Below are positions 1 to 40,300 of a stretch of 64,000 bases of DNA, in pieces. The DNA is taken from positions 120,218,001 through 120,282,000 of the forward strand of contig OZ296649.1 of NCBI GenBank assembly GCA_965655095.1, read 5' to 3'. The position numbers and the translations under genes are program-made. The notes below the pieces were generated by a model that worked only from the letters and a program-made list of their open reading frames with translations, was not told the origin of the DNA and searched no databases. This DNA comes from Haplodiscus bocki. Lineage: Eukaryota. Position 1 is the first letter of the stretch. Each line of letters starts with the position of its first letter.

Positions 1-1149
1 CGTATCAGTCAAAAAGAACATTGAGAACACTTCAGAGACGTTCTCACTGCGGTGTGATGGCTCAACTTTATCTTTACTGGCACCAACGCATTGCTCACTG
101 CCACTGACAGTTTGCGTATTCACTGGCTTCCTATATCTGTGAAATGTTTTCCCATTTTCGGGAATCAGTGTCATGGTAATGTTCGCCGTTTATTCCACTA
201 ATTTCTATTGTGAATTGTACTGCTGTTACGGCACACTTTTTTTCGTACCTTCAACTATTACTGTAGGCTTGCCTTTAGAGGAAGTGGTAAATATTATTTC
301 ATTAACATTAGTTGCAACAGGAAACAGATTGTTGCAATAATTTCAGTCATAAATGAGAATAATTCAAACTATGTTTACTTGCATTTGTGAAGTTTTTTAC
401 CTGATTCACTAGGACGCTTTTGTCTGTAGTCTGTAAAAAAATGTTAAACTAGAGCTGTTTAACTGTGTTTCGAGAATTGATAATCAATGTAAAAATGCGC
501 TCAATGTGTGAATCTGTTCTCGTGACAAAAGTTAAAGTAACCACTTAGTTCATTGCTTCTACTGATTTGGTTTGACGCTGTAACGTATTTAGGTCTTAGA
601 TGCAATTGATAGTTGGATGAAATTTTCTGGGGGTCAATTGAAAGTGGGTTAAATTGTATCTGGGGTGAAATAAACTTGGACCCCGAGAGAAATGCGAGAC
701 AATTCCCCGTAGCTGCAGTATAATACGATAGTGTATAGGCAATTACAGGCTCACGTCGTTTGACCACTTTCTAGGGAACTGTCCCTTGACAGCGGCGTCC
801 TTGTTATATATGTATGTCCACCATGGATCCGAAAATAGTATCATTTTGTTCCACGAATTCTGGAGTTTTTATAATTATACTTTTGCAAGCTTGTATTATA
901 TCGCAGGCTTCTTTTTCTCCGAACTGTTCTCGACTTGCATTTGTGCCTGTATTCTGTTGTTGCGTAGATTTTGAGCATGCGCTCTCGCCTTCGCTCAAAA
1001 TATTGTTCATGCGATCTAGCTGTTGAAAAAATTGGGTCACGTGGCATATTTCCACGATTGCGCGCCTATTTTAAATATAAGGCTAATCAACTACTATACT
1101 ACTCACACTTCGTACTCTTTACACTTGTATATAAACTTATGAGAATTAA

Positions 1150-2315
1150 CTGAGTTAATTAAGTTTTTTCCCTCGGAGTTTGGATTTCTTTGAGGCAGGT
1201 AGAGTTCAACTACTTTTGATTAAGGGGGTTTTTTTCGCGTCTGCGTCCTTTTCGAAAGCCCTCGAGCGTTTCGATACACGCGGTTGCAGTGCGCATCGCC
1301 AAAAGGGACCTGCAAGTCAAAATGCCAGCCTTCACACTTTGTTGTTTTCTCACGAAGCCTTCAAATATAGCTTCTGTTTTTTCCGAACATCCGGAGGGAT
1401 TTCGATTTTTTTAGAACTTTATGTTTCCTGGAAATCGCAAAGCTCATCAATGCTTTCAATTTTTCTGTAGTCTATCCCTTGGTTGTCGCAGATATCAGAA
1501 ACAGTATCACAATGAAAGAGAAAGATGCTTTTATTCGGCCAATTTCAAATGCTGTGGTGGATTGTATCTTATGTCAGTTCAGGTCTTTTTTCATAGTGCT
1601 TCTTCAAACCTAGCTTTTTTGGTTGAAGCCCTGACCAGGATGAAATTAGGAGCAAGATAGTACAGCCTAGAGTTATTGTTGAAAAGTTCATGGCGGCGAG
1701 TTCTAAGTCTAACGGAATTCGATCGGGGAATGACGTAGGTGTTACACTGAGTATTGAGTGGATAGTATTTTCCCCGTTTTGTTGACCAAGAGAGCATAAC
1801 TGCAAGCAGGTGTAACATGCCCAAGTTGTTCATGGATGCTGTAAGCTCGATAAAGAGTTGGTGCAAACTTGAACGTGCCGTCGGCTAGCCAATTTGATGA
1901 TGCTCGCTAGAGTATAGCCATCTCATCGTCTCCCAAAAGCAGAATGCGGTCGCTGTCCTCTTTGCCCGTATCAGTCAAAAAGAACATTGAGAACACTTCA
2001 GAGACGTTCTCACTGCGGTGTGATGGCTCAACTTTATCTTCACTGGCGCCAACGCATTGCTCACTGCCACTGACAGTTTGCGTATTCACTGGCTTCCTTC
2101 ATCTGTGAAATATTTTCCCATTTTCCGGAATCAGTGTCATGGTAATGTTCGCCGTTTATTTCACTTATTTCTATTGTAAATGGTACTGCTGTTACGGGGC
2201 ACTTTTTTCATACCTTCAACTATTAGTGTAGGCTTGCCTTTAGAGGAAGTGGTAAATATTATTTCATTAACATTAGTTGCAACAGGAAACAGATTGTTGC
2301 AATAATTTCAGTCAT
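1150..2315 (-). pseudogene. Decayed FLYWCH-MULE (Mutator-like) DDE transposase gene; representative copy, repeated in every monomer
   Basis: Minus-strand translation across frameshifts gives, in order: NEIIFTTSSKGKPTLIVEG / KCPVTAV..EISEINGEHYHDTD (FLYWCH-like C...HxH, ~2139-2270); FLTDTGKEDSDRILLLGDDEMAIL*RASSNWLADGTFKFAPTLYRAYSIHEQLGHVTPACSYALLVNKT (first D, DGTF at 1871-1882); PDRIPLDLELAAMN (second D, ~1701-1712); FHPGQGFNQK / LGLKKHYE (CxxH region, ~1629-1646); IDELCDFQET; EAIFEG / TTKCEGWHF (catalytic E, 1322-1336). Motif order matches animal MULE transposases. Stops and frameshifts are shared by the copies inspected. Confidence 0.9.
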
Positions 2316-5065: not shown

Positions 5066-6568
5066 TGAGTTAATTAAGTTTTTTCCCTCGGAGTTTGGAT
5101 TTCTTTGAGGCAGGTAGAGTTCAACTACTTTTGATTATGGCGGTTTTTTTCGTGTCTGCGTCCTTTTCGAAAGCCCTCGAGCGTTTCGATACACGCGGTT
5201 GCAGTGCGCATCGCCAAAAGGGACCTGCAAGTCAAAATGCCAGCCTTCACACTTTCTTGTTTTCTCACCAAGCCTTCAAATATAGCTTCTGTTTTTTTCC
5301 GAACATCCGGAGGGATTTCGTTTTTTTTATAACTTTATATGTTTCCTGGAAATCGCAAAGCCCATCAATGCTTTCAATTTTTCTGTAGTCTATCCCTTGG
5401 TTGTCGCAGATATCAGAAACAGTATCACAATGAAAGAGAAAGATGCTTTTATTCGGCCAATTTCAAATGCTGTGGTGGATTGTATCTTATGTCAGTTCAG
5501 GTATTTTTTCATACTGCTTCTTCAAACCTAGCTTTTTTGGTTGAAGCCCTGACGAGGATGAATATAGGAGCAAGATAGTACAGCATAGAATTATTGTTGA
5601 AAAGTTCATGGCAGCGAGTTCTAAGTCTAACGGAATTCGATCGGGGAATGACGTAGGTGTTACACTGAGTATTGAGTGGATAGTATTTTCCCCATTTTGT
5701 TGACCAAGAGAGCATAACTGCAAGCAGGTGTAACTTGCCCAGGTTGTTCATGGATGCTGTAAGCTCGATAAAGAGTTGGTGCAAACTTGAACGTGCCGTC
5801 GGCTAGCCAATTTGATGATGCTCGCTAGAGTTTAGCCATTTCATCGTCTCCCAAAAGCAGAATGCGGTCGCTGTCCTCCTTGCCCGTATCAGTCAAAAAG
5901 AACATTGAGAACACTTCAGAGACGTTCTCACTGGGGTGTGGTGGCTCAACTTTATCTTCACTGGCACCAACGCATTGCTCACTGCCACTGACAGTTTGCG
6001 TATTCACTGGCTTCCTTCATCTGTGAAATATTTTCCCATTTTCCGGAATCAGTGTCATGGTAATGTTCGCCGTTTATTTCACTAATTTCTATTGTAAATG
6101 GTACTGCTGTTACGGGGCACTTTTTTCATACCTTCAACTATTAGTGTAGGCTTGCCTTTAGAGGAAGTGGTAAATGTTATTTCATTAACATTAGTTGCAA
6201 CAGGAAACAGATTGTTGCAATAATTTCAGTCATAAATGAGATTAATTCAAACTATGTTTACTTGCATTTGTGAAATTTTTTACCTGATTCACTAGGACGC
6301 TTTTGTCAGTAGTCTGTAAAATAATTGTTAAACTAGAGCTGTTTAACTGTGTTTCGAGAATTGATAATCAATGTAAAAATGCGCTCAATGTGTGACTCTG
6401 TTTTCGTGACAAAAGTTTCAGTAACCACTTAGTTCATTGCTTCTACTGATTTGGTTTGACGCTGTAACGTAATTAGGTTTTGGATGCAATTGATAGTTGG
6501 ATGAAATTTTCTGGGGGTCAATTGAAAGTGGGTTAAATTGTATCTGGGGTGAAATAAACTTGGACCCC
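5066..6568 (-). mobile_element. One-ended Mutator-like (Phantom-type) DNA transposon relic: TIR-like end, leader and transposase pseudogene; representative copy
   Basis: Transposase relic (~5066-6233) is preceded on the minus strand by ~250 bp of leader and a block of ~16-bp subrepeats starting GGGGTCCAAG at 6568. No matching second TIR is seen on the other side. Confidence 0.7.
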
Positions 6569-9500
6569 GAGAGAAATGCGAGACAATTCCCCGTAGCTGC
6601 AGTATAATACGATAGTGTATAGGCAATTACAAGCTCACGTCGTTTGACCACTTTCTAGGGAACTGACCCTTGACAGCGGGCGTCCTTGTTATATATGTAT
6701 GTCCATCATGGATCCGAAAATAGTATCATTTTGTTCCACGAATTCTGGAGTTTTGTTTCTATAATTATACTTTTGCAAGCTTGTATTATATCGCAGGCCC
6801 CCTTTTTCTCCGAACTGTTCTCGACTTGCATTTGTGCCTGTATTCTGTTGTCTCCTAGATTTTGAGCATTCGCTCTCGCCTTCGCTCAAAATTTTGTTCA
6901 TGCGCTCTAGCTGTTGAAAAAATTGGGTCACGTGGCATATTTCCACGAATGCGCGCCTATTTTGAATATCAGGCTAATCAACTACTATACTTTTCACACT
7001 TCGTACTCTCTACACTTGTATATAAACTTATGAGAATTAACTGAGTTAAATAAGTTTTTTCCCTTGGAGTTTGGGTTTCTCTGAGGCAGGTAGAGTTGAA
7101 CTGCTTTTGATTATGGCGGTTTTTTCCGTGTCTGCGTCCTTTTCGAAAGCCCTCAAGCGTTTCGATACACGCGCTTGCAGTGCGCATCGCCTAAAGGGAC
7201 CTGCAAGTCAAAATGCCAGCCTTCACACTTTGTTGTTTTCTCACCAAGGCTTCAAATATAGCTTCTCTTTTTTTCCGAACATCCGGAGGGATTTCGTTTT
7301 TTTTAGAACTTTATATGTTTCCTGGAAATCGCAAAGCTCATCAATGCTTTCAATTTCTTTGTAGTCTCTTCCTTGATTGTCGCAGTTATCAGAAACAGTA
7401 TCACAATGAAAGAGAAAGATGCTTTTATTCGGCCGATTTCAAATGCTGTGGTGGAATGTATCTTATGTCAGTTCAGGTATTTTTTCATAGTGCTTCTTCA
7501 AACCTAGCTTTTTTGGTTGAAGCCCTGACCAGGATGGAATTAGGAGCAAGATAGTACAGCATAGAATTATTGTTGAAAAGTTCATGGCAGCGAGTTCTAA
7601 GTCTAACGGAATTCGATTGGGGAATGACGTAGGTGTTACACTGAGTACTGAGTGGATAGTATTTTCCCCGTTTTGTTGACCAGGAGAGCATAACTGCAAG
7701 CAGGTGTAACATACCCAAGTTGTTCATGGATGCTGTAAGCTCGATAAAGAGTTGGTGCAAACTTGAACGTGCCGTCGGCTAGCCAATTTGATGATGCTTG
7801 CTAGACTTTAGCCATCTCATCGTCTCCCAAAAGCAGAATGCGGTCGCTGTCCTCCTTGCCCGTATCAGTCAAAAAGAACAATGAGAAAACTTCAGAGACG
7901 TTCTCACTGGGGTGTGATGGCTCAACTTTATCTTCACTGGCACCAACGCATTGCTCACTGCCACTGACAGTTTGCGTATTCACTGGCTTCCTTTATCTGT
8001 GAAATATTTTCCCATTTTCCGGAATCAGTGTCATGGTAATGTTCGCCGTTTATTTCTCTAGTTTCTATTGTAAATGGTACTGCTGTTATGGGGCACTTTT
8101 TTCATACCTTCAACTATTAGTGTAGGCTTGCCTTTAGAGGAAGTGGTAAATATTATTTCATTAACATTAGTTGCAACAGGAAACAGATTGTTGCAATAAT
8201 TTCTGTCGTAAATGAGATTAATTCAAACTATGTTTACTTGCATTTGTGAAAATTTTTACCTGATTCACTGGTACGCTTTTGTCAGTAGTCTGTAAAATAA
8301 TTGTTGAACTAGAGCTGTTTAACTGTGTTTCGAGAATTGATAATCAATGTAAAAATGCGCTCAATGTGTGACTCTGTTCTCGTGACAAAAGTTTCAGTAA
8401 CCACTTAGTTCATTGCTTGTACTGATTTGGTTTGACGCTTTAACGTAATTAGGTTTTGGATGCAATTGATAGTTGGATGAAATTTTCTGGGGGTCAATTG
8501 AAAGTGGGTTAAATTGTATCTGTGGTGAAATAAACTTGGACCCCGAGAGAAATGCGAGACAATTCCCCGTAGCTGCAGTATAATACGATAGTGTATAGGC
8601 AATTACAAGCTCACGTCGTTTGACCACTTTCTAGGGAACTGACCCTTGACAGCGGGCGTCCTTGTTATATATGTATGTCCATCATGGATCCGAAAATAGT
8701 ATCATTTTGTTCCACGAATTCTGGAGTTTTGTTTCTATATTTATACTTTTGCAAGCTTGTATTATATCGCAGGCCCCCTTTTTCTCCGAACTGTTTTCGA
8801 CTTGCATTTGTGCCTGTATTCTGTTGTCTCCTAGATTTTGAGCATGCGCTCTCTTCTTCGCTCAAAATTTTGTTCATGCGCTCTAGCTGTTGAAAAAATT
8901 GGGTCACGTGGCATATTTCCACGAATGCTCGCCTATTTCAAATATAAGGCTAATCAACTACTATACTACTCACACTTCGTACTCTTTACACTTGTATATA
9001 AACTTATCTGAATTGACTGAGTTAAATAAGTTTTTGCTCTCGGAGTTTGGATTTCTTTGAGGCAGGTAGAGTTCAACTGCTTTTGATTATGGCGGTTTTT
9101 TTTCTTGTCTGCGTCCTTTTCGAAAGCCCTCAAGCGTTTCGATACACGCGGTTGCAGTGTGCATCGCCAAAAGGGACCTGCAAGTCAAAATGCCAGCCTT
9201 CACACTTTGTTGTTTTCTCACCAAGCCTTCAAATATAGCTTCTCTTTTTTCCGAACATCCGGAGGGATTTCGATTTTTTTTAGAACTTTATGTTTCCTGG
9301 AAATCGCAAAGCTCATCAATGCTTTCAATTTTTCTGTAGTCTCTTGCTTGATCGTCGCAGATATTAGAAACAGTATCACAATGAAAGAGAAAGATGCTTT
9401 TATTCGGCCGATTTCAAATGCTGTGGTGGAATGTATCTTATGTCAGTTCAGGTATTTTTTCATAATGCTTCTTCAAACCTAGCTTTTTTGGTTGAAGCCC

Positions 9501-12500
9501 TGACCAGGATGGAGTTAGGAGCAAGATAGTACAGCATAGAATTATTGTTGAAAAGTTCATGGCAGCGAGTTCTAAGTCTAACGGAATTCGATCGGGGAAT
9601 GACGTAGGTGTTACACTGAGTATTGAGTGGATAGTATTTTCCTTGTTTTGTTGACCAAGAGAGCATAACTGCAAGCAGGTGTAACATGCCCAAGTTGTTC
9701 ATGGATGCTGTAAGCTCGATAAAGAGTTGTTGCAAACTTGAACGTGCCGTCGGCTAGCCAATTTGATGATGCTTGCTAGAGTTTAGCCATCTCATCGTCT
9801 CCCAAAAGCAGAATGCGGTCGCTGTCCTCCTTGCCCGTATGAGTCAAAAAGAACAATGAGAACACTTCAGAGACGTTCTCACTGGGGTGTGATGGCTCAA
9901 CTTTATCTTCACTGGCACCAACGCATTGCTCACTGCCACTGACAGTTTGCGTATTCACTGGCTTCCTTTATCTGTGAATTATTTTCCCATTTTCCGGAAT
10001 CAGCGTCATGGTAATGTTCGCATTTTATTTCTCTAGTTTCTATTGTAAATGGTACTGCTGTTACGGGGCACTGTTTTCATACCTTCAACTATTAGTGTAG
10101 GCTTGCCTTTGGAGGAAGTGGTATTATATCGCAGGCCCCCTTTTTCTCCGAACTGTTCTCGACTTGCATTTGTGCCTGTATTGTGTTGTTGCCTAGATTT
10201 TGAGCATGCGCTCTCGCCTTCGCTGAAAATATTGTTCATGCGCTCTAGCTGTTGAAAAAATTGGGTCACGTGGCATCTTTCCATGAATGCGCGCCTATTT
10301 CAAATATAAGGCTAATCAACTACTATACCACTCACACTTCCTACTCTTTACACTTGTATATAAACTTCTGTGAATTAACTGAGTTAAATAAGTTTTTGCT
10401 CTCGGAGTTTGGATTTCTTTGAGGCAGGTAGAGTTCAACTGTTTTTGATTATGGCGGTTTTTTTTCGTCTCTGCGTCCTTTTCGAAAGCCCTCAAGCGTT
10501 TCGATACACGCGGTTGCAGTGTGCATCGCCAAAAGGGACCTGCAAGTCAAAATGCCAGCCTTCACACTTTGTTGTTTTCTCACCAAGCCTTCAAATATAG
10601 CTTCTCTTTTTTCCGAACATCCGGAGGGATTTCGATTTTTTTAGAACTTTATGTTTCCTGGAAATCGCAAAGCTCATCAATGCTTTCAATTTCTCTGTAG
10701 TCTCTTCCTTGATTGTCGCAGTTATCAGAAACAGTATCACAATGAAAGAGAAAGATGCTTTTGTTCGGCCGATTTCAAATGCTGTGTTGGAATGTATCTT
10801 ATGTCAGTTCAGGTATTTTTTCATAATGCTTCTTCAAACCTAGCTGTTTTGGTTGAAGCCCTGACCAGGATGGAATTAGGAGGAAGATAGTACAGCATAG
10901 ATTTTTTGTTGAACAGTTCATGGCAGCGAGTTCTAAGTCTAACGGAATTCGATCGGGGAATGACGTAGGTGTTACACTGAGTATTGAGTGGATAGTATTT
11001 TCCCCGTTTTGTTGACCAAGAGAGCATAACTGCAAGCAGGTGTAACATGCCCAAGTTGTTCATGGATGCTGTAAGCTCGATAAAGAGTTGTTGCAAACTT
11101 GAACGTGCCGTCGGCTAGCCAATTTGATGATGCTTGCTAGAGTTTAGCCATCTCATCGTCTCCCAAAAGCAGAATGCGGTCGCTGTCCTCCTTGCCCGTA
11201 TGAGTCAAAAAGAACATTGAACACTTCAGAGACGTTCTCACTGCGGTGTGATGGCTCAACTTTATCTTCACTGGCACCAACGCATTGCTCACTGCCACTG
11301 ACAGTTTGCGTATTCACTGGCTACCTTTATCTGTGAAATATTTTCCCATTTTCCGGAATCAGTGTCATGGTAATGTTCGCATTTTATTTCTCTAGTTTCT
11401 ATTGTAAATGGTACTGCTGTTACGGGGCACTGTTTTCATACCTTCAACTATTAGTGTAGGCTTGCCTTTGGAGGAAGTGGTAAATATTATTTCATTAACA
11501 TTAGTTGCAACAGGAAACAGATTGTTGCAATAATTTCAGTCGTAAATGAGATTAATTCAAACTATGTTTACTTGCATTTGTGAACTTTTTCACCTCATTC
11601 ACTAGGACGCTTTTGTCAGTAGTCTGTAAAATAATTGTTAAACTAGAGCTGTTTAACTGTGTTTCGAGAATTGATAATCAATGTAAAAATGCGCTCAATG
11701 TGTGACTCTGTTTTCGTGACAAAAGTTTCAGTAACCACTTAGTTCATTGCTTCTACTGATTTGGTTTGACGCTGTAACGTAATTAGGTTTTGGATGCAAT
11801 TGATAGTTGGATGAAATTTTCTGGGGGTCAATTGAAAGTGGGTTAAATTGTATCTGGGGTGAAATAAACTTGGACCCCGAGAGAAATGCGAGACAATTCC
11901 CCGTAGCTGCAGTATAATACGATAGTGTATAGGCAATTACAAGCTCACGTCGTTTGACCACTTTCTAGGGAACTGACCCTTGACAGCGGGCGTCCTTGTT
12001 ATATATGTATGTCCATCATGGATCCGAAAATAGTATCATTTTGTTCCACGAATTCTGGAGTTTTGTTTCTATAATTATACTTTTGCAAGCTTGTATTATA
12101 TCGCAGGCCCCCTTTTTCTCCGAACTGTTCTCGACTTGCATTTGTGCCTGTATTCTGTTGTCTCCTAGATTTTGAGCATTCGCTCTCGCCTTCGCTCAAA
12201 ATATTGTTCATGCGCTCTAGCTGTTGAAAAAATTGGGTCACGTGGCATATTTCCACGATTGCGCGCCTATTTTAAATATAAGGCTAATCAACTACTATAC
12301 TACTCACACTTCGTACTCTTTACACTTGTATATAAACTTATGAGAATTAACTGAGTTAAATAAGTTTTTTCCCTTGGAGTTTGGGTTTCTCTGAGGCAGG
12401 TAGAGTTGAACTGCTTTTGATTATGGCGGTTTTTTCCGTGTCTGCGTCCTTTTCGAAAGCCCTCAAGCGTTTCGATACACGCGCTTGCAATGCGCATCGC

Positions 12501-15500
12501 CTAAAGGGACCTGCAAGTCAAAATGCCAGCCTTCACACTTTGTTGTTTTCTCACCAAGCCTTCAAATATAGCTTCTCTTTTTTTCCGAACATCCGGAGGG
12601 ATTTCGTTTTTTTTAGAACTTTATATGTTTCCTGGAAATCGCAAAGCTCATCAATGCTTTCAATTTTTCTGTAGTCTCTTCCTTGATTGTCGCAGATGTC
12701 AGAAACAGTATCACAATGAAAGAGAAAGATGCTTTTATTCGGCCGATTTCAAATGCTGTGGTGGAATGTATCTTATGTCAGTTCAGGTATTTTTTCATAG
12801 TGCTTCTTCAAACCTAGCTTTTTTGGTTGAATCCCTGACCAGGATGGAATTAGGAGCAAGATAGTACAGCATAGAATTATTGTTGAAAAGTTCATGGCAG
12901 CGAGTTCTAAGTCTAACGGAATTCGATTGGGGAATGACGTAGGTGTTACACTGAGTACTGAGTGGATAGTATTTTCCCCGTTTTGTTGACCAGGAGAGCA
13001 TAACTGCAAGCAGGTGTAACATACCCAAGTTGTTCATGGATGCTGTAAGCTCGATAAAGAGTTGGTGCAAACTTGAACGTGCCGTCGGCTAGCCAATTTG
13101 ATGATGCTTGCTAGACTTTAGCCATCTCATCGTCTCCCAAAAGCAGAATGCGGTCGCTGTCCTCCTTGCCCGTATCAGTCAAAAAGAACAATGAGAAAAC
13201 TTCAGAGACGTTCTCACTGGGGTGTGATGGCTCAACTTTATCTTCACTGGCACCAACGCATTGCTCACTGCCACTGACAGTTTGCGTATTCACTGGCTTC
13301 CTTTATCTGTGAAATATTTTCCCATTTTCCGGAATCAGTGTCATGGTAATGTTCGCCGTTTATTTCTCTAGTTTCTATTGTAAATGGTACTGCTGTTATG
13401 GGGCACTTTTTTCATACCTTCAACTATTAGTGTAGGCTTGCCTTTAGAGGAAGTGGTAAATATTATTTCATTAACATTAGTTGCAACAGGAAACAGATTG
13501 TTGCAATAATTTCTGTCGTAAATGAGATTAATTCAAACTATGTTTACTTGCATTTGTGAAATTTTTGACCTGATTCACTGGTACGCTATTGTCAGTAGTC
13601 TGTAAAATAATTGCTAAACTAGAGCTGTTTAACTGTGTTTCGAGAATTGATAATCAATGTAAAAATGCGCTCAATGTGTGACTCTGTTCTCGTGACAAAA
13701 GTTTCAGTAACCACTTAGTTCATTGCTTCTACTGATTTGGTTTGACGCTGTAACGTAATTAGGTTTTGGATGCAATTGATAGTTGGATGAAATTTTCTGG
13801 GGGTCAATTGAAAGTGGGTTAAATTGTATCTGTGGTGAAATAAACTTGGACCCCGAGAGAAATGCGAGACAATTCCCCGTAGCTGCAGTATAATACGATA
13901 GTGTATAGGCAATTACAAGCTCACGTCGTTTGACCACTTTCTAGGGAACTGACCCTTGACAGCGGGCGTCCTTGTTATATATGTATGTCCATCATGGATC
14001 CGAAAATAGTATCATTTTGTTCCACGAATTCTGGAGTTTTGTTTATATTTATACTTTTGCAAGCTTGTATTATATCGCAGGCCCCCTTTTTCTCCGAACT
14101 GTTCTCGACTTGCATTTGTGCCTGTATTCTGTTGTCTCCTAGATTTTGAGCATGCGCTCTCTTCTTCGCTCAAAATTTTGTTCATGCGCTCTAGCTGTTG
14201 AAAAAATTGGGTCACGTGGCATATTTCCACGAATGCGCGCCTATTTTAAATATAAGGCTAATCAACTACTATACTACTCACACTTCGTACTCTTTACACT
14301 TGTATATAAACTTATCTGAATTGACTGAGTTAAATAAGTTTTTGCTCTCGGAGTTTGGATTTCTTTGAGGCAGGTAGAGTTCAACTGCTTTTGATTATGG
14401 CGGTTTTTTTTCTTGTCTGCGTCCTTTTCGAAAGCCCTCAAGCGTTTCGATACACGCGGTTGCAGTGTGCATCGCCAAAAGGGACCTGCAAGTCAAAATG
14501 CCAGCCTTCACACTTTGTTGTTTTCTCACCAAGCCTTCAAATATAACTTCTCTTTTTTCCGAACATCCGGAGGGATTTCGATTTTTTTAGAACTTTATGT
14601 TTCCTGGAAATCGCAAAGCTCATCAATGCTTTCAATTTTTCTGTAGTCTCTTGCTTGATTGTCGCAGATATTAGAAACAGTATCACAATGAAAGAGAAAG
14701 ATGCTTTTATTCGGCCGATTTCAAATGCTGTGGTGGAATGTATCTTATGTCAGTTCAGGTATTTTTTCATAATGCTTCTTCAAACCTAGCTTTTTTGGTT
14801 GAAGCCCTGACCAGGATGGAATTAGGAGCAAGATAGTACAGCATAGAATTATTGTTGAAAAGTTCATGGCAGCGAGTTCTAAGTCTAACGGAATTCGATC
14901 GGGGAATGACGTAGGTGTTACACTGAGTATTGAGTGGATAGTATTTTCCTTGTTTTGTTGACCAAGAGAGCATAACTGCAAGCAGGTGTAACATGCCCAA
15001 GTTGTTCATGGATGCTGTAAGCTCGATAAAGAGTTGTTGCAAACTTGAACGTGCCGTCGGCTAGCCAATTTGATGATGCTTGCTAGAGTTTAGCCATCTC
15101 ATCGTCTCCCAAAAGCAGAATGCGGTCGCTGTCCTCCTTGCCCGTATGAGTCAAAAAGAACAATGAGAACACTTCAGAGACGTTCTCACTGGGGTGTGAT
15201 GGCTCAACTTTATCTTCACTGGCACCAACGCATTGCTCACTGCCACTGACAGTTTGCGTATTCACTGGCTTCCTTTATCTGTGAATTATTTTCCCATTTT
15301 CCGGAATCAGCGTCATGGTAATGTTCGCATTTTATTTCTCTAGTTTCTATTGTAAATGGTACTGCTGTTACGGGGCACTGTTTTCATACCTTCAACTATT
15401 AGTGTAGGCTTGCCTTTGGAGGAAGTGGTATTATATCGCAGGCCCCCTTTTTCTCCGAACTGTTCTCGACTTGCATTTGTGCCTGTATTGTGTTGTTGCC

Positions 15501-16310
15501 TAGATTTTGAGCATGCGCTCTCGCCTTCGCTGAAAATATTGTTCATGCGCTCTAGCTGTTGAAAAAATTGGGTCACGTGGCATCTTTCCACGAATGCGCG
15601 CCTATTTCAAATATAAGGCTAATCAACTACTATACCACTCACACTTCCTACTCTTTACACTTGTATATAAACTTCTGTGAATTAACTGAGTTAAATAAGT
15701 TTTTGCTCTCGGAGTTTGGATTTCTTTGAGGCAGGTAGAGTTCAACTGTTTTTGATTATGGCGGTTTTTTTTCGTCTCTGCGTCCTTTTCGAAAGCCCTC
15801 AAGCGTTTCGATACACGCGGTTGCAGTGTGCATCGCCAAAAGGGACCTGCAAGTCAAAATGCCAGCCTTCACACTTTGTTGTTTTCTCACCAAGCCTTCA
15901 AATATAGCTTCTCTTTTTTCCGAACATCCGGAGGGATTTCGATTTTTTTAGAACTTTATGTTTCCTGGAAATCGCAAAGCTCATCAATGCTTTCAATTTC
16001 TCTGTAGTCTCTTCCTTGATTGTCGCAGTTATCAGAAACAGTATCACAATGAAAGAGAAAGATGCTTTTGTTCGGCCGATTTCAAATGCTGTGTTGGAAT
16101 GTATCTTATGTCAGTTCAGGTATTTTTTCATAATGCTTCTTCAAACCTAGCTGTTTTGGTTGAAGCCCTGACCAGGATGGAATTAGGAGGAAGATAGTAC
16201 AGCATAGATTTTTTGTTGAACAGTTCATGGCAGCGAGTTCTAAGTCTAACGGAATTCGATCGGGGAATGACGTAGGTGTTACACTGAGTATTGAGTGGAT
16301 AGTATTTTCC
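6300..16310. repeat. Higher-order repeat: long-long-short monomer triplet duplicated with 5307-5310 bp period
   Basis: Private variants recur at +5310/+5307: cccttggagtttgggtttctctgagg (7061/12371), ctaaagggac (7191/12501), the MAKV ORF end (7801/13111), and an identical deletion junction (~10121/~15428). Confidence 0.92.
6481..6568 (-). repeat. Five degenerate ~16-bp subrepeats ending in GGACCCC; probable MULE terminal inverted repeat (one per full monomer, e.g. also ~597-684)
   Basis: tggatgcaattgatagt|tggatgaaattttctg|ggggtcaattgaaagt|gggttaaattgtatct|ggggtgaaataaactt|ggacccc. The copies at ~2590 and ~4548 lack 15 bp between two AATT cores, i.e. one unit. Confidence 0.65.
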
Positions 16311-28300: not shown

Positions 28301-31300
28301 TCTCATCGTCTCCCAAAAGCAGAATGCGGTCGCTGTCCTCCTTGCCCGTATCAGTCAAAAAGAACATTGAGAACACTTCAGAGACGTTCTCACTGGGGTG
28401 TGATGGCTCAACTTTATCTTCACTGGCACCAACGCATTGCTCACTGCCACTGACAGTTTGCGTATTCACTGGCTTCCTTTATCTGTGAAATATTTTCCCA
28501 TTTTCCGGAATCAGTGTCATGGTAATGTTCGCCGTTTATTTCACTAATTTCTATTGTAAATGGTACTGCTGTTACGGGGCACTTTTTTCATACCTTCAAC
28601 TATTAGTGTAGGCTTGCCTTTAGAGGGAGTGGTAAATATTATTTCATTAACATTAGTTGCAACAGGAAACAGATTGTTGCAATATTTTCAGTCATAAATG
28701 AGATTAATTCAAACTATGTTTACTTGCATTTGTGAAATTTTTTACCTGATTCACTAGGACGCTATTGTCAGTAGTCTATAAAATAATTGTTAAACTTGAG
28801 CTGTTTAACTGTGTTTCGAGAATTGATAATTAATGTAAAAATGCGCTCAATGTGTGACTCTGTTTTCGTTACAAAAATTTCAGTAACCACTTAGTTCATT
28901 GATTCTACTGATTTGCTTTGACGCTGTAACGTAATTAGGTTTTGGATGCAATTGATAGTTGGATGAAATTTTCTGGGGATCAATTGAAAGTGGGTTAAAT
29001 TGTATCTGGGGTGAAATAAACTTGGACCCCGAGAGAAATGCGAGACAATTCCCCGTAGCTGCAGTATAATACGATAGTGTATAGGCAATTACAAGCTCAC
29101 GTCGTTTGACCACTTTCTAGTGAACTGTCCCTTGACAGCGGGCGTCCTTGTTATATATGTATGTCCATCATGGATCCGAAAATAGTATCATTTTGTTCCA
29201 TGAATTCTGGAGTTTTGTTTTTATAATTATACTTTTGCAAGCTTGTATTATATCGCAGGCCTCTTTTTCTCCGAACTGTTCTCGACTTGCATTTGTGCCT
29301 GTTTTTTGTTGTTGCCTAGATTCTGAGCATGCGCTCTCGCCTTCGCTCTAAATATTGTTCACGCGCTCTAGCTGTTGAAAAAATTGGGTCACGTAGCATA
29401 TTTCCACGAATGCGCGCCTATTTTAAATATAAGGCTAATCAACTACTATACTACTCACACTTCGTACTCTTTACACTTGTATATAAACTTATGAGAATTA
29501 ACTGAGTTAAATAAGTTTTTTCCCTCGGAGTTTGGATTTCTTTGAGGCAGGTAGAGTTCAACTGCTTTTGATTATGGCGGTTTTTTTCGTGTCTGCGTCC
29601 TTTTCGAAAGCCCTCAAGCGTTTCGATACACGTGGTTGCAGTGCGCATCGCCAAAAGGGACCTGCAAGTCAAAATGCCAGCCTTCACACTTTGTTGTTTT
29701 CTCACCAAGCCTTCAAATATAGCTTCTCTTTTTTTCCGAACATCCGGAGGGATTTCGATTTTTTTCAGAACTTTATATGTTTCCTGGAAATCGCAAAGCT
29801 CATCAATGCTTTCAATTTTTCTGTAGTCTATTCCTTGATTGTCGCAGATGTCAGAAACAGTATCACAATGAAAGAGAAAGATGCTTTTATTCGGCCGATT
29901 TCAAATGCTGTGGTGGAATGTATCTTATGTCAGTTCAGGTATTTTTTCATAGTGCTTCTTCAAACCTAGCTTTTTTGGTTGAAGCCCTGACCAGGATGAA
30001 ATTAGGAGCAAGATAGTACAGCATAGAATTATTGTTGAAAAGTTCATGGCAGCGAGTTCTAAGTCTAACGGAATTCGATCGGGGAATGACGTAGGTGTTA
30101 CACTGAGTATTGAGTGGATAGTATTTTCCCCGTTTTGTTGACCAAGAGGGCATATCTGCAAGCAGGTGTAACATGCCCAAGTTGTTCATGGATGCTGTAA
30201 GCTCGATGAAGAGTTGGTGCAAACTTGAACGTGCCGTCGGCTAGCCAATTTGATGATGCTCGCTAGAGTTTAGCCATCTCATCGTCTCCCAAAAGCAGAA
30301 TGCGGTCGCTGTCCTCCTTGCCCGTATCAGTCAAAAAGAACATTGAGAACACTTCAGAGACGTTCTCACTGGGGTGTGATGGCTCAACTTTATCTTCACT
30401 GGCACCAACGCATTGCTCACTGCCACTGACAGTTTGCGTATTCACTGGCTTCCTTTATCTGTGAAATATTTTCCCATTTTCCGGAATCAGTGTCATGGTA
30501 AAGTTCGCCGTTTATTTCACTAATTTCTATTGTAAATGGTACTGCTGTTACGGGGCACTTTTTTCATACCTTCAACTATTAGTGTAGGCTTGCCTTTAGA
30601 GGGAGTGGTAAATATTATTTCATTAACATTAGTTGCAACAGGAAACAGATTGTTGCAATATTTTCAGTCATAAATGAGATTAATTCAAACTATGTTTACT
30701 TGCATTTGTGAAATTTTTTACCTGATTCACTAGGACGCTATTGTCAGTAGTCTGTAAAATAATTGTTAAACTTGAGCTGTTTAACTGTGTTTCGAGAATT
30801 GATAATCAATGTAAAAATGCGCTCAATGTGTGACTCTGTTTTCGTGACAAAAATTTCAGTAACCACTTAGTTCATTGATTCTACTGATTTGCTTTGACGC
30901 TGTAACGTAATTAGGTTTTGGATGCAATTGATAGTTGGATGAAATTTTCTGGGGATCAATTGAAAGTGGGTTAAATTGTATCTGGGGTGAAATAAACTTG
31001 GACCCCGAGAGAAATGCGAGACAATTCCCCGTAGCTGCAGTATAATACGATAGTGTATAGGCAATTACAAGCTCACGTCGTTTGACCACTTTATAGTGAA
31101 CTGTCCCTTGACAGCGGGCGTCCTTGTTATATATGTATGTCCATCATGGATCCGAAAATAGTATCATTTTGTTCCATGAATTCTGGAGTTTTGTTTTTAT
31201 AATTATACTTTTGCAAGCTTGTATTATATCGCAGGCCTCTTTTTCTCCGAACTGTTCTCGACTTGCATTTGTGCCTGTTTTTTGTTGTTGCCTAGATTCT

Positions 31301-34300
31301 GAGCATGCGCTCTCGCCTTCGCTCAAAATATTGTTCATGCGCTCTAGCTGTTGAAAAAATCGTGTCACATGGCATATTTCCACGAATGCGCGCCTATTTT
31401 AAGTATAAGGCTAATCAACTACTATACTACTCACACTTCGTACTCTTTACACTTGTATATAAACTTCTGAGAATTAACTGAGTTAAATAAGTTTTTTCCC
31501 TCGAAGTTTGGATTTCTTTGAGGCAGGTAGAGTTCAACTGGTTTTGATTATGGCGGTTTTTTTTCGTGTTTGCGTCCTTTTCGAAAGCCGTCAAGCGTTT
31601 CGATACACGCGGTTGCAGTGCGCATCGCCAAAAGGGACCTGCAAGTCAAAATGCCAGCCTTCACACTTTGTTGTTTTCTCACCAAGCCTTCAAATATAGC
31701 TTCTTTTTTTCCGAACATCCGGAGGGTTTTTCGATTTTTTTTAGAACTTTTTATGTTTCCTGGAAATCGCAAAGCTCATCAATGCTTTCAATTTTTCTGT
31801 AGTCTATTCCTTGATTGTCGCAGATGTCAGAAACAGTATCACAATGAAAGAGAAAGATGCTTTCATTCGGCCGATTTCAAATGCTGTGGTGGAATGTATC
31901 TTATGTCAGTTCAGGTATTTTTTCATAGTACTTCTTCAAACCTAGCTTTTTTGGTTAAGCCCTGACCAGGATGAAATTAGGAGCAAGATAGTTCAGCGTT
32001 GAATTATTGTTGAAAAGTTCATGGCAGCGAGTTCTAAGTCTAACGGAATTCGATCGGGGAATGACGTAGGTGTTACACTGAGTATTGAGTGGATAGTATT
32101 TTCCCCGTTTTGTTGACCAAGAGAGCATAACTGCAAGCAGGTGTAACATGCCCAAGTTTTTCATGGCTGCTGTGAGCTCGATAAAGAGTTGGTGCAAACT
32201 TGAACGTGCCGTCGGCTAGCCAATTTGATGATGCTCGCTAGAGTATAGACATCTCATCGTCTCCCAAAAGCAGAATGCGGTCGCTGTCCTCCTTGCCCGT
32301 ATTAGTCAAAAAGAACAATGAGAACACTTCTGAGACGTTCTCACTGGGGTGTGATGGCTCAACTTTATCTTCACTGGCACCAACGCATTGCTCACTGCCA
32401 CTGACAGTTTGCGTATTCACTGGCTTCCTTTATCTGTGAAATATTTTCCCATTTTCCGGAATCAGTGTCATGGTAATGTTCGCCGTTTATTTCACTAATT
32501 TCTATTGTAAATGGTACTGCTGTTACGGGGCACTTTTTTCATACCTTCAACTATTAGTGTAGGCTTGCCTTTACAGGAAGTGGTAAATAATATTTCATTA
32601 ACATTAGTTGCAACAGGAAACAGATTGTTGCAATAATTTCAGTCATAAATGAGATTAATTCAAACTATGTTTACTTGCATTTGTGAAATTTTTTACCTGA
32701 TTCACTAGGACGCTTTTGTCAGTAGTCTGTAAAATAGTTGTTAAACTAGAGCTGTTTAACTGTGTTTCGAGAATTGATAATCAATGTAAAAATGCGCTCA
32801 ATGTGTGACTCTGTTTTCGTGACAAAAGTTTCAGTAACCACTTAGTTCATTGCTTCTACTGATTTGCTTTGACGCTGTAACGTAATTAGGTTTTGGATGC
32901 AATTGATAGTTGGATGAAATTTTCTGGGGATCAATTGAAAGTGGGTTAAATTGTATCTGGGGTGAAATAAACTTGGACCCCGAGAGAAATGCGAGACAAT
33001 TCCCCGTAGCTGCAGTATAATACGATAGTGTATAGGCAATTACAAGCTCACGTCGTTTGACCACTTTATAGTGAACTGTCCCTTGACAGCGGGCGTCCTT
33101 GTTATATATGTATGTCCATCATGGATCCGAAAATAGTATCATTTTGTTCCATGAATTCTGGAGTTTTGTTTTTATAATTATACTTTTGCAAGCTTGTATT
33201 ATATCGCAGGCCTCTTTTTCTCCGAACTGTTCTCGACTTGCATTTGTGCCTGTTTTTTGTTGTTGCCTAGATTCTGAGCATGCGCTCTCGCCTTCGCTCA
33301 AAATATTGTTCATGCGCTCTAGCTGTTGAAAAAATCGTGTCACATGGCATATTTCCACGAATGCGCGCCTATTTTAAGTATAAGGCTAATCAACTACTAT
33401 ACTACTCACACTTCGTACTCTTTACACTTGTATATAAACTTATGAGAATTAACTGAGTTAAATAAGTTTTTTCCCTCGAAGTTTGGATTTCTTTGAGGCA
33501 GGTAGAGTTCAACTGGTTTTGATTATGGCGGTTTTTTTTCGTGTTTGCGTCCTTTTCGAAAGCCGTCAAGCGTTTCGATACACGCGGTTGCAGTGCGCAT
33601 CGCCAAAAGGGACCTGCAAGTCAAAATGCCAGCCTTCACACTTTGTTGTTTTCTCACCAAGCCTTCAAATATAGCTTCTTTTTTTCCGAACATCCGGAGG
33701 GTTTTTCGATTTTTTTTAGAACTTTTTATGTTTCCTGGAAATCGCAAAGCTCATCAATGCTTTCAATTTTTCTGTAGTCTATTCCTTGATTGTCGCAGAT
33801 GTCAGAAACAGTATCACAATGAAAGAGAAAGATGCTTTCATTCGGCCGATTTCAAATGCTGTGGTGGAATGTATCTTATGTCAGTTCAGGTATTTTTTCA
33901 TAGTACTTCTTCAAACCTAGCTTTTTTGGTTAAGCCCTGACCAGGATGAAATTAGGAGCAAGATAGTTCAGCGTTGAATTATTGTTGAAAAGTTCATGGC
34001 AGCGAGTTCTAAGTCTAACGGAATTCGATCGGGGAATGACGTAGGTGTTACACTGAGTATTGAGTGGATAGTATTTTCCCCGTTTTGTTGACCAAGAGAG
34101 CATAACTGCAAGCAGGTGTAACATGCCCAAGTTTTTCATGGCTGCTGTGAGCTCGATAAAGAGTTGGTGCAAACTTGAACGTGCCGTCGGCTAGCCAATT
34201 TGATGATGCTCGCTAGAGTATAGACATCTCATCGTCTCCCAAAAGCAGAATGCGGTCGCTGTCCTCCTTGCCCGTATTAGTCAAAAAGAACAATGAGAAC

Positions 34301-37300: not shown

Positions 37301-40300
37301 TTCCACGAATGCGCGCCTATTTTAAATATAAGGCTAATCAACTACTATACTACTCACACTTCGTACTCTTTACACTTGTATATAAACTTATGAGAATTAA
37401 CTGAGTTAAATAAGTTTTTTCCCTCGGAGTTTGGATTTCTTTGAGGCAGGTAGAGTTCAACTGCTTTTGATTATGGCGGTTTTTTTTCGTGTCTGCGTCC
37501 TTTTCGAAAGCCCTCAAGCGTTTCGATACACGCGGTTGCAGTGCGCATCTCCAAAAGGGACCTGCAAGTCAAAATGCCAGCCTTCACACTTTGTTGTTTT
37601 CTCACCAAGCCTTCAAATATAGCTTTTCTTTTTTCCCGAACATCCGGAGGGTTTTCGATTTTTTTCAGAACTTTATATGTTTCCTGGAAATCGCAAAGCT
37701 CATCAATGCTTTCAATTTTCTGTAGTCTATTCCTTGATTGTCGCAGATGTCAGAAACAGTATCACAATGAAAGAGAAAGATGCTTTTATTCGGCCGATTT
37801 CAAATGCTGTGGTGGAATGTATCTTATGTCAGTTCAGGTATTTTTTCATAGTGCTTCTTCAAACCTAGCTTTTTTGGTTGAAGCCCTGACCAGGATGAAA
37901 TTAGGAGCAAGATAGTACAACATAGAATTATTGTTGAAAAGGTCATGGCAGCGAGTTCTAAGTCTAACGGAATTCGATCGGGGAATGACGTAGGTGTTAC
38001 ACTGAGTATTGAGTGGATAGTATTTTCCCCGTTTTGTTGACCAAGAGAGCATAACTGCAAGCAGGTGTAACATGCCCAAGTTTTTCATGGCTGCTGTAAG
38101 CTCGATAAAGAGTTGGTGCAAACTTGAACGTGCCGTCGGCTAGTCAATTTGATGATGCTCGCTAGAGTATAGACATCTCATCGTCTCCCAAAAGCAGAAT
38201 GCGGTCGCTGTCCTCCTTGCCCGTATCAGTCAAAAAGAACATTGAGAACACTTCAGAGACGTTCTCACTGGGGTGTGGTGGCTCAACTTTATCTTCACTG
38301 GCACCAACGCATTGCTCACTGCCACTGACAGTTTGCGTATGCACTGGCTTCCTTTATCTGTGAAATATTTTCCCATTTTCCGGAATCAGTGTCATGGTAA
38401 TGTTCGCCGTTTATTTCACTAATTTCTATTGTAAATGGTACTGCTGTTACGGGGCACTTTTTTCATACCTTCAACTATTAGTGTAGGCTTGCCTTTAGAG
38501 GGAGTGGTAAATATTATTTCATTAACATTAGTTGCAACAGGAAACAGATTGTTGCAATATTTTCAGTCATAAATGAGATTAATTCAAACTATGTTTACTT
38601 GCATTTGTGAATTTTTTTTACCTGATTCACTAGGACGCTATTGTCAGTAGGCTGTAAAATAATTGTTAAACTAGAGCTGTTTAACTGTGTTTCGAGAATT
38701 GATAATCAATGTAAAAATGCGCTCAATGTGTGACTCTGTTTTCGTGACAAAAGTTTCAGTAACCACTTAGTTCATTGCTTCTACTGATTTGGTTTGACGC
38801 TGTAACGTAATTAGGTTTTGGATTCAATTGATGGTTGGATGAAATTTTCTGGGGGTCAATTGAAAGTGGGTTAAATTGTACCTGGGGTGAAGTAAACTTG
38901 GACCCCGAGAGAAATGCGAGACAATTCCCCGTAGCTGCAGTATAATCCGATAGTGTATAGGCAATTACAAGCTCACGTCGTTTGACCACTTTCTAGGGAA
39001 CTGTCCCTTGACAGCGGGCGTCCTTGTTATATATGTATGTCCATCATGGATCCGAAAATAGTATCATTTTGTTCCACGAATTCTGGAGTTTTGTTTCTAT
39101 AATTATACTTTTGCAAACTTGTACTATAACGCAGGCTTCTTTTTCTCCGAACTGTTCTCGACTTGCATTTGTGCCTGTATTCTGTTGTTGCCTAGATTTT
39201 GAGCATGCGCTCTCGCCTTCGCTCTAAATATTGTTCATGCGCTCTAGCTGTTGAAAAAATTGGGTCACGTAGCATATTTCCACGAATGCGCGCCTATTTT
39301 AAATATAAGGCTAATCAACTACTATACTACTCACACTTCGTACTCTTTACACTTGTATATAAACTTATGAGAATTAACTGAGTTAAATAAGTTTTTTCCC
39401 TCGGAGTTTGGATTTCTTTGAGGCAGGTAGAGTTCAACTGCTTTTGATTATGGCGGTTTTTTTCGTGTCTGCGTCCTTTTCGAAAGCCCTCAAGCGTTTC
39501 GATACACGCGGTTGCAGTGCGCATCTCCAAAAGGGACCTGCAAGTCAAAATGCCAGCCTTCACACTTTGTTGTTTTCTCACCAAGCCTTCAAATATAGCT
39601 TTTCTTTTTTCCCGAACATCCGGAGGGATTTCGATTTTTTTCAGAACTTTATATGTTTCCTGGAAATCGCAAAGCTCATCAATGCTTTCAATTTTCTGTA
39701 GTCTATTCCTTGATTGTCGCAGATGTCAGAAACAGTATCACAATGAAAGAGAAAGATGCTTTTATTCGGCCGATTTCAAATGCTGTGGTGGAATGTATCT
39801 TATGTCAGTTCAGGTATTTTTTCATAGTGCTTCTTCAAACCTAGCTTTTTTGGTTGAAGCCCTGACCAGGATGAAATTAGGAGCAAGATAGTACAACATA
39901 GAATTATTGTTGAAAAGGTCATGGCAGCGAGTTCTAAGTCTAACGGAATTCGATCGGGGAATGACGTAGGTGTTACACTGAGTATTGAGTGGATAGTATT
40001 CATTTCAGTGTTACATTTTTGCTTGGCTCGTTAGTGAAACTGCCGACTATTGGTTTGGCTTTTTTGTTGCGACACTGGTTCGCATTTCGAATCGATCCAC
40101 TTGAGAGTTGCCTGAATTTCTGAGGCCATGAATTTGCCATACCTTCAGAATTGTCTGAAATAGGCAACAGAAATACCTTCCTTCTTTTCATACACCGAAA
40201 AAACTTGAAATGAGAATTCCAAATCTTTTCGTGATATCCCTTCGAATATACCAAGAAAAAACTCGCAAACGCAAGTTCTCAAAATTTTCAGTGTGATCTT

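What the first reader, a model, noticed from the sequence alone, without database searches (positions are those of the whole stretch)
1..40000. A >=40-kb macrosatellite whose monomer is mostly a dead FLYWCH-MULE transposon
Seen: ~75% of each 1975-bp monomer is a one-ended Mutator-like element. Its disabling stop (MA-x-x*-x-ASSNWLADGTF) and frameshifts are shared across copies while monomers remain highly similar, so the element died first and was amplified later as a block. Known: FLYWCH+MULE transposases with subrepeat-rich TIRs define Phantom-type Mutator elements, and TE-derived satellites usually come from TIRs or internal minisatellites rather than the whole coding region. Inference: a co-oriented array of transposase sequence could serve as a small-RNA source (piRNA-cluster-like), a transposase-binding array or a heterochromatin/centromere seed. 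It could also be neutral amplification.
Basis: partly seen in the sequence, partly recalled or inferred. Interest (0 to 1): 0.8.

Follow-up and report, generated by a model that had tools for sequence, protein, structure and literature searches.

The report
Tandem array built from dead transposon
A 53-kb stretch of this animal chromosome is one 2-kb segment copied about 27 times head to tail, three quarters of it a long-dead MULE jumping gene; it is a clear example of a known way for satellite DNA to arise, with no sign of a function.

Summary
It has a 1,976-bp period and runs from 12.6 kb upstream of the window to window base 40000. That is 52.6 kb: 27 units plus a 0.3-unit stub. Units differ by 0.1-5.7%, and the array occurs at one locus in the 1.5-Gb genome.

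On the minus (sense) strand each unit holds:
- 290 bp of an abundant ~430-bp dispersed repeat;
- a ~200-bp spacer;
- ~1,490 bp (75%) of a Mutator-like element: a 5' inverted repeat with TTTCACCCCA-type subrepeats, a weak FLYWCH-like remnant, and the whole DDE/MULE core.

Three stops and three frame changes are shared by essentially all units, so the element was dead before it was copied. The last unit reads without a break into the element's uncopied 3' ~700 bp, which includes the 3' inverted repeat. This shows a segmental tandem duplication at the original insertion site, later expanded by unequal exchange. It was not a double insertion.

Only decayed relics of this MULE lineage (67-70% DNA identity) exist elsewhere. 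Pfam does not recognise the pieces directly. Phantom membership was not tested. Diversity along the unit shows no constraint. No read or RNA data could be obtained, so function is untested. The scan had already noted similar kb-unit, transposon-derived arrays on other DNA of this genome.

The parts
1..40000 (-). In-window part of the tandem array (20.3 of about 27.3 units). The array continues 12,573 bp upstream of the window, to G000:C2:120,205,428.
29514..31489 (-). Reference unit U05 in sense orientation. Unit position u1 = window 31489 and u1976 = window 29514. The novel tandem junction lies between u1976 and the next u1.
31200..31489 (-). u1-290: the 3' ~290 bp, up to the exact 3' end, of a ~430-bp dispersed non-autonomous repeat. 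The repeat gave 993 first-look candidates genome-wide and the unit is 70-76% identical to them. It is truncated at the tandem junction.
31001..31199 (-). u291-489: unassigned spacer between the dispersed repeat and the MULE end. It holds the TCCATGATGGA palindrome that another first-stage note proposed as the junction.
30880..31000 (-). u490-610: MULE 5' terminal inverted repeat region with TTTCACCCCA-type subrepeats.
30440..30618 (-). u872-1050: weak, frame-shifted FLYWCH-like N-terminal remnant, colinear with intact FLYWCH-MULE proteins.
29540..30382 (-). u1108-1950: remnant of the MULE DDE transposase core and C-terminal region. It is read in two frames and broken by three stops.
30263..30265 (-). 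Stop codon (u1225) just before the WLADGTFK motif. It is shared by 27 of 27 units (26 TAG, 1 TAA).
7053..17671 (-). A three-unit block duplicated once (period about 5.31 kb): U12-U14 and U15-U17. Each block holds one 1.36-kb unit lacking u270-880, at window 14337-15697 and 9029-10390.
39390..40000 (-). Truncated first unit (u1365-1976). The array stops abruptly inside the MULE core at window 40000, which is chromosome coordinate 120,258,000.

Best explanation
Proposed history. A ~2.2-kb FLYWCH-type Mutator-like element inserted about 200 bp downstream of a copy of a common ~430-bp repeat. It then decayed, gaining stops and frameshifts. Much later a 1,976-bp segment was duplicated in tandem at that site. 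The segment ran from inside the neighbouring repeat, across the spacer and the 5' TIR, to near the end of the transposase reading frame. The new junction has at most a few bases of microhomology. Unequal exchange then expanded and reshuffled the copies to about 27 units.

Reading. The array is a transposon-derived macrosatellite that arose by ordinary segmental duplication. Transposition played no part, and it is most likely evolving neutrally.

Shown: the anatomy, the shared lesions, the single locus and the continuity into the uncopied 3' end. Inferred: the duplication and unequal-exchange mechanism, and neutrality.
For: Array extent and period.

Single locus: all high-identity matches lie within C2:120,205,427-120,258,000.

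MULE identity: tblastn gives 78.6 bits to Pfam-verified FLYWCH+MULE ORFs. An HMM built from seven intact ORFs of this genome hits four colinear sense-strand pieces, at E 1.8e-12 to 6e-4.

TIRs: sister relic L057 has a 29-31-nt inverted repeat pair bounding a 2.3-kb element. The same subrepeats sit at u490-610 of the unit and in the left flank at L033:6650-6800.

Continuity: the last unit plus the left flank aligns as single HSPs across the array border with L054, L055 and L056. With L057 it aligns from TIR to TIR.

The array's left end falls within about 5 bp of the point where the dispersed repeat is truncated in every unit.

Dead before copying: the stops at u1225, u1563 and u1587 are present in 27/27, 27/28 and 28/28 units. 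Frame-changing indels private to single units are rare.

Unequal exchange: neighbouring units are more alike (97.9%) than distant ones (96.2%). A 3-unit block is duplicated. Units U23-U26 differ by only 0.1-0.5%.

No constraint: diversity is 0.015-0.057 per 100 bp in every part of the unit, and transitions and transversions are about equal. There is no Rfam family or tRNA in the unit.
Against: The right (sense-5') border does not fit a simple duplication. The array starts inside the MULE core (u1365) next to unrelated DNA, instead of at the missing 5' ~140 bp of the dispersed repeat. That border also falls exactly on chromosome coordinate 120,258,000. A later deletion or an assembly join could explain this, and neither could be checked.

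Neutrality is inferred only from even diversity and from the lack of ORFs and RNA genes.

Pfam itself does not recognise the decayed pieces.
Confidence: 0.77

Rival explanations
1. The array was driven by transposition: either a double insertion of two MULE copies at one site followed by expansion, or a rolling-circle or extrachromosomal-circle product of the element that re-integrated.
For: Arrays of DNA transposons are thought to arise this way. Examples are the hobo ~16-copy array, and Bari1 with missing TIR sequence and a partial element at the array edge (PMC5932611). This array also ends in a partial unit.
Against: Every unit carries about 490 bp of non-MULE DNA and lacks the element's 3' ~700 bp and 3' TIR. 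The last unit runs straight into that 3' part at the original locus. The element was already broken in the founder unit, and no intact member of its lineage exists in the genome.
Confidence: 0.04
2. The array is kept for a function. Proposals are a co-oriented small-RNA (piRNA-like) source against MULEs, a sink of TIR binding sites for transposase, or a heterochromatin or centromere seed.
For: There are 27 co-oriented copies of transposase and TIR sequence. The genome holds many MULE loci with long open frames that such a locus could in principle target: 598 first-look candidates and 150 scored hits, all above the Pfam cut-off.
Against: - The nearest intact MULEs share only 36-51% protein identity and no detectable DNA identity with the unit. 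That is too distant for small-RNA targeting.
- The element's own lineage is extinct.
- Diversity is even along the unit.
- The array is a single 53-kb locus at 120 Mb of a 152-Mb chromosome (contig length). An intact METTL6-like ORF lies 4 kb away. This does not look like a centromere.
Confidence: 0.08
3. The array is partly an assembly artefact. The copy number, or the right border, or both, are wrong: a mis-join or a collapsed repeat at C2:120,258,000.
For: The array ends exactly on a multiple of 1,000 in chromosome coordinates, at a point inside the unit that the duplication model does not predict. Units U23-U26 are nearly identical, at 0.1-0.5% divergence. That is the kind of sequence assemblers miscount.
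Against: Most units are distinguishable, at 1-5.7% divergence. They carry structured variants: a 610-bp deletion, a 17-bp deletion and a 3-unit block. There are no Ns. No further copies sit on other contigs. The left border is biologically coherent.
Confidence: 0.1

Closest known systems
Bari1 tandem arrays of Drosophila melanogaster, and the P-element-related array of D. guanche (as summarised in McGurk and Barbash 2018, PMC5932611)
   Same: A fixed head-to-tail array of tens of copies of a DNA transposon that includes its coding region. Terminal sequence is missing at every junction and there is a partial element at one edge.
   Different: Those units are essentially whole elements joined end to end. 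Here the unit is a genomic segment: 25% is non-MULE flank, the whole 3' end of the element is missing, and the element was already dead and old when copied.
hobo ~16-copy array and other transposon dimers formed by double insertion (PMC5932611)
   Same: A transposon-derived tandem array expanded from a founder duplication by unequal exchange.
   Different: Double-insertion arrays have a target-site duplication between complete ends. This array has a junction between the transposase 3' region and a truncated neighbouring repeat.
Other kb-unit transposon-derived arrays in this same genome: scan notes s1-369336, s1-376504, s1-376508 and s1-369382, and the 4 x 2.9-kb MULE-containing array at C5:107,093,674-107,105,269
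   Same: An inner piece of one transposon copy, with a 1.8-2.9-kb unit, copied head to tail on the spot at a single locus.
   Different: The source elements differ: an accessory-gene transposon, Helitron-type elements, and a young MULE family. The C5 array has only 4 units at 98.7-99.8% identity and comes from a MULE family that still has open frames. The scan notes themselves were not re-tested here.
Phantom family of the Mutator superfamily (Marquez and Pritham 2010; group 20 of Dupeyron et al. 2019, PMC6446971)
   Same: An animal MULE with one compact transposase ORF, a FLYWCH-type N-terminus in its intact relatives in this genome, and long TIRs.
   Different: Phantom is defined by phylogeny and its zinc finger varies (none, FLYWCH or SWIM). 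FLYWCH also occurs in other MULE groups, and cnidarian MULEs fall in other groups. No phylogenetic placement was done.

Membership tests
Mutator-like element (MULE, Mutator superfamily) | DDE transposase carrying the MULE domain (PF10551) | tested here: met
   Direct Pfam scans of the stop-free pieces give no hit. The pieces do match Pfam-verified MULE ORFs of this genome colinearly, at 78.6 bits. An HMM of intact ORFs gives E 1.8e-12. A genome-wide search with a 54-aa piece gives E 1.2e-7 and lands on the same loci as the PF10551 search.
Mutator-like element (MULE, Mutator superfamily) | Long terminal inverted repeats | tested here: met
   Sister relic L057 has a TIR pair at 4774-4814 and 7031-7065. 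Matching subrepeat blocks lie at u490-610 of the unit and, inverted, at L033:6650-6800 in the left flank.
Mutator-like element (MULE, Mutator superfamily) | 8-10-bp target-site duplication | tested here: inconclusive
   The outer ends of the decayed TIRs cannot be fixed to the base, so no duplication could be read.
FLYWCH-MULE / Phantom family | FLYWCH zinc finger (PF04500) at the N-terminus | tested here: inconclusive
   Pfam finds nothing in the unit or in the relics. There are weak colinear matches at u872-1050: tblastn E 0.006, and HMM E 0.65 and 5.8. Sister relic L056 matches HMM positions 34-148 at E 5.8e-5. Intact MULEs of other lineages in this genome do carry FLYWCH.
FLYWCH-MULE / Phantom family | Phylogenetic placement within the Phantom clade | not tested
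   No reference Phantom sequences were fetched. Dupeyron et al. show that FLYWCH is not diagnostic.
Macrosatellite / satellite DNA | Head-to-tail tandem array of a kb-scale unit in tens of copies | tested here: met
   27 units plus a stub, all co-oriented, 52.6 kb.
Macrosatellite / satellite DNA | Copy-number polymorphism between individuals | not testable with these tools
Transposon array by double insertion | Junction made of two complete element ends separated by a target-site duplication | tested here: not met
   The junction joins u1976, inside the transposase 3' region, to the middle of an unrelated repeat. The 3' TIR is absent from all units.
Centromeric satellite | Large arrays, usually shared among chromosomes, bound by CENP-A | tested here: not met
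   The array is one 53-kb locus in the whole assembly. CENP-A binding cannot be tested with these tools.
piRNA cluster | Dense small-RNA production with the piRNA signatures | not testable with these tools
   No runs could be obtained.

The most novel reading that the evidence does not exclude
This genome may have a recurrent, size-biased process that amplifies 1.8-2.9-kb segments holding transposon relics into 10-150-kb arrays on the spot. The process could be circle-based or replication-based. This MULE array, the C5 MULE array and several arrays noted elsewhere by the scan would all be its products. Some of them might serve as co-oriented small-RNA source loci.
Probability: 0.08. Interest if true: 0.55.

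Novelty: new member of a known kind. Interest (0 to 1): 0.27.

Why it matters
This is an unusually clear case of how a satellite is born from a transposon without any transposition. Both the founder element and the edge of the duplicated segment are still readable, because the last unit runs into the uncopied 3' end of the same element. That gives a datable example: family decay is about 32%, against array divergence of about 3.4%. Such a case is useful for studies of macrosatellite origin and for repeat annotation, where an array like this could be mistaken for 27 MULE insertions or for a gene cluster. It does not change what is known about satellites or MULEs.

Tried and rejected
- Pfam scans of 19 stop-free pieces of the unit and of sister relics gave no MULE or FLYWCH hit. 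Identity had to be shown through intact relatives instead.
- The ~300-bp dispersed repeat is not the MULE's own TIR or a derived MITE. It is absent from 15 loci of other MULE lineages and from the four sister relics L054-L057, and it has no terminal inverted repeats.
- A first BLAST of the left flank against the unit and against intact proteins found nothing. The 3' remainder of the element only appeared through the sister relics.
- The right flank has no relation to the unit, to the relics or to the missing part of the dispersed repeat.
- An RNA gene as the reason for amplification is rejected. Rfam gave no hit at gathering score and there is no tRNA in window 27000-64000.
- The palindrome proposed as the amplification junction in scan note s1-376738 lies in the spacer (u337-395), about 340 bp from the true junction.
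Depth, expression and small RNAs are therefore untested.
- The large protein searches were not used, because the family scans and the own-genome searches settled the identity.
- The organism was not identified. One scan note calls it a probable reef coral. The Atlas clusters nearest the neighbouring METTL6-like ORF are mostly arthropod. Neither point was pursued.
Full report
OBSERVATION.
A k-mer offset analysis shows a dominant period of 1975-1977 bp over window 1-40000. No repeated 20-mers occur from 40001 on. Tandem Repeats Finder missed the array only because its longest period is 500 bp. BLAST of one monomer tiles the region head to tail at 94.6-98.7% identity. Base composition is flat across the array (GC 0.39-0.41, steady negative AT skew) and changes at 40001.

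I fetched 40 kb upstream of the window. The array continues to window -12573. It therefore covers G000:C2:120,205,428-120,258,000, which is 52,573 bp without any N. It contains 27 co-oriented units plus a 611-bp stub. Own-genome searches with three parts of the unit find high-identity copies only inside this interval. It is a single locus in a 1.5-Gb assembly.

ANATOMY OF THE UNIT.
The minus strand is the sense strand. I number unit positions u1 = window 31489 to u1976 = window 29514.

- u1-290 is the 3' ~290 bp of a ~430-bp dispersed, non-autonomous repeat, and it runs to that repeat's exact 3' end. The own-genome search raised 993 first-look candidates, at 70-76% identity to the unit. Twelve fetched copies are 74-87% alike and extend about 140 bp further on the 5' side than the unit does. 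The repeat has no terminal inverted repeats and does not occur in other MULE loci.
- u291-489 matches nothing else.
- From about u490 the unit is colinear with four decayed relics of one MULE lineage elsewhere in the genome (L054-L057), at 67-70% DNA identity.
- Relic L057 has an inverted repeat pair (4774-4814 and 7031-7065, up to 90% complementary) that bounds a 2.3-kb element. The pair is built of TTTCACCCCA-type subrepeats. The same subrepeat block lies at u490-610.
- Further in, intact FLYWCH+MULE ORFs of this genome (413-487 aa; Pfam MULE E about 1e-13, FLYWCH down to 8e-12) align to the unit by tblastn. The DDE core aligns at u1108-1518 (78.6 bits, 35% identity over 145 aa). The C-terminal part aligns at u1365-1949 in another frame. 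There is a weak N-terminal match at u872-952 (E 0.006).
- These tblastn E-values refer to a tiny database. The genome-wide figure comes from searching with the 54-aa piece that begins RASSNWLADGTFK. It gives E 1.2e-7 and below on about 120 loci, which coincide with the PF10551 hits.
- An HMM built from seven intact ORFs hits four colinear sense-strand pieces (E 1.8e-12, 2.6e-6, 4.9e-5, 6e-4). It hits the FLYWCH region only at E 0.65 and 5.8. Sister relic L056 keeps a detectable N-terminal match that includes the second half of FLYWCH (E 5.8e-5).
- Pfam itself reports nothing for any stop-free piece.

The FLYWCH label rests on weak, position-consistent evidence.

THE ELEMENT IS ONE-ENDED INSIDE THE UNIT AND COMPLETE AT THE LOCUS.
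Relics L054 and L055 share about 500 bp beyond the point that corresponds to u1976. The unit therefore lacks the element's 3' part.

An own-genome search with the 800 bp left of the array hit those same downstream parts of L054 and L055. Local BLAST confirmed this and added the right TIR of L057. The TIR alignment shows the inverted subrepeat block at L033:6650-6800, which is about window -13350 to -13200.

The last unit plus the left flank aligns as single HSPs across the array border with L054 (composite 1124-2217), L055 (1725-2137) and L056 (1291-2328); the border is at composite position 1971. With L057 the composite aligns from TIR to TIR. The original element was about 2.2 kb. The array sits at its original insertion site.

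THE JUNCTION.
In every unit the dispersed repeat is cut at the same point, and there it abuts the transposase 3' region. The array's left end lies within about 5 bp of that point. At most a few bases are shared across the junction.

This is the signature of a segmental tandem duplication (A-B-C becoming A-B-B-C) whose segment B runs from inside the neighbouring repeat to u1976. It is not the TIR-TSD-TIR junction expected from a double insertion (PMC5932611).

DEAD BEFORE COPYING.
Along the reading path supported by tblastn:
- the stop at u1225 (window 30263-30265) is present in 27 of 27 units;
- the stops at u1563 and u1587 are present in 27 of 28 and 28 of 28;
- the changes of frame are shared, because only a few units carry private indels in u860-1500.

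Mean diversity among units is 3.4% (range 0.1-5.7%). The element differs by about 30-33% from its sister relics, all of which are also broken. No intact member of this lineage exists in the genome. The nearest open MULE frames belong to other lineages: 36-46% identity over the core and 48-51% over the 54-aa piece.

DYNAMICS OF THE ARRAY.
- Adjacent units are more alike (97.9%) than units more than eight apart (96.2%).
- Units U12-U14 and U15-U17 form a duplicated three-unit block (0.3-1.4% between partners). Each block includes a 1.36-kb unit that lacks u270-880.
- Units U23-U26 differ by 0.1-0.5%, U22 by about 1.5% from them, and U22-U25 share a 17-bp deletion.

This is the pattern expected from unequal exchange.

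Diversity is spread evenly over the repeat fragment, spacer, TIR and coding remnant, at 0.015-0.057 per 100 bp. Transitions and transversions are about equal. For that count a majority string of the units was computed inside the script only; it was neither printed nor saved. The unit holds no Rfam family and no tRNA. The longest stop-free piece is about 150 codons.

WHAT IS NOT EXPLAINED.
On the sense-5' side the array begins inside the MULE core (u1365), against unrelated DNA. The missing 5' part of the dispersed repeat is not there. This border also lies exactly at chromosome coordinate 120,258,000. A later deletion is the simplest reading. An assembly join cannot be excluded.

No read depth, spanning reads, RNA or small-RNA evidence could therefore be obtained, and read laying was not used.

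SURROUNDINGS.
Four kb to the right of the array lies an intact, intron-less 333-aa ORF (window 44079-45080, + strand). It has SAM-methyltransferase domains, and its nearest Atlas clusters are tRNA N(3)-methylcytidine methyltransferases of the METTL6 type. The rest of the right flank is interspersed repeats.

The locus lies at 120 Mb of a 152-Mb chromosome. It is one of a kind and small, so nothing suggests a centromere.

COMPARISON WITH WHAT IS KNOWN.
Arrays of near-whole DNA transposons are on record: Bari1, a hobo ~16-copy array, and a P-related array in D. guanche. They are discussed as products of double insertion or rolling circles followed by unequal exchange (PMC5932611). The present array works like these in its expansion phase. 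It differs in its founder event, which was a segmental duplication that merely happened to contain a dead element.

Within this genome I found a second case: four 2.9-kb units at C5:107,093,674-107,105,269, at 98.7-99.8% identity, that contain part of a young MULE family. The scan's notes describe further kb-unit, transposon-derived arrays on other chromosomes. I did not re-test those notes.

Dupeyron et al. 2019 list FLYWCH in several MULE groups and describe Phantom's zinc finger as none, FLYWCH or SWIM (PMC6446971). I did not build a tree, so the family name stays open.

VERDICT.
The structural interpretation is supported: a dead, one-ended MULE was amplified as a block. The proposed functions have no support from sequence, and no experimental data could be reached. 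This is a new member of a known kind, a transposon-derived macrosatellite, with an unusually legible origin.

Noticed in passing
G000:C5:107,093,674-107,105,269 (L039:3674 to L040:5269): A second MULE-containing tandem array: four units of about 2.9 kb at 98.7-99.8% identity. Each holds part of a young FLYWCH-MULE family, 95-96% protein identity to the open frames L008 and L009. The first copy extends upstream of the array, so this too is a segmental duplication that starts inside a transposase.
   Followed up: partly
window 40000/40001 (G000:C2:120,258,000): The array ends abruptly inside a unit, exactly on a multiple of 1,000 in chromosome coordinates. There is no N and no homology across the break. 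It may be chance, a deletion or an assembly join.
   Followed up: partly
window 44079-45080 (+): An intact, intron-less 333-aa ORF with SAM-methyltransferase domains. Its nearest Atlas clusters are METTL6-type tRNA m3C methyltransferases. It lies 4 kb from the array, and the lack of introns may mean a retrogene.
   Followed up: partly
window 31200-31489 and loci L011-L022: A ~430-bp dispersed non-autonomous repeat with 993 first-look candidates. Fetched copies are 74-87% alike. It ends in a short hairpin (ACACTTGC..GCAAGTGT) followed by AAT and has no terminal inverted repeats. It was not classified.
   Followed up: partly
window 46722-46910: A 105-bp tandem repeat of 1.8 copies, 83% matching, in the right flank.
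   Followed up: no
G000 genome-wide: MULE transposase domains are very abundant: 598 first-look candidates and 150 scored hits, all above the Pfam cut-off. Many lie in open frames of 400-519 aa, so some MULE families may still be active.
   Followed up: no
window 40336-40432: A ~100-bp segment in the right flank matches dozens of places on many chromosomes at 75-84% identity. It is another short interspersed repeat.
   Followed up: no
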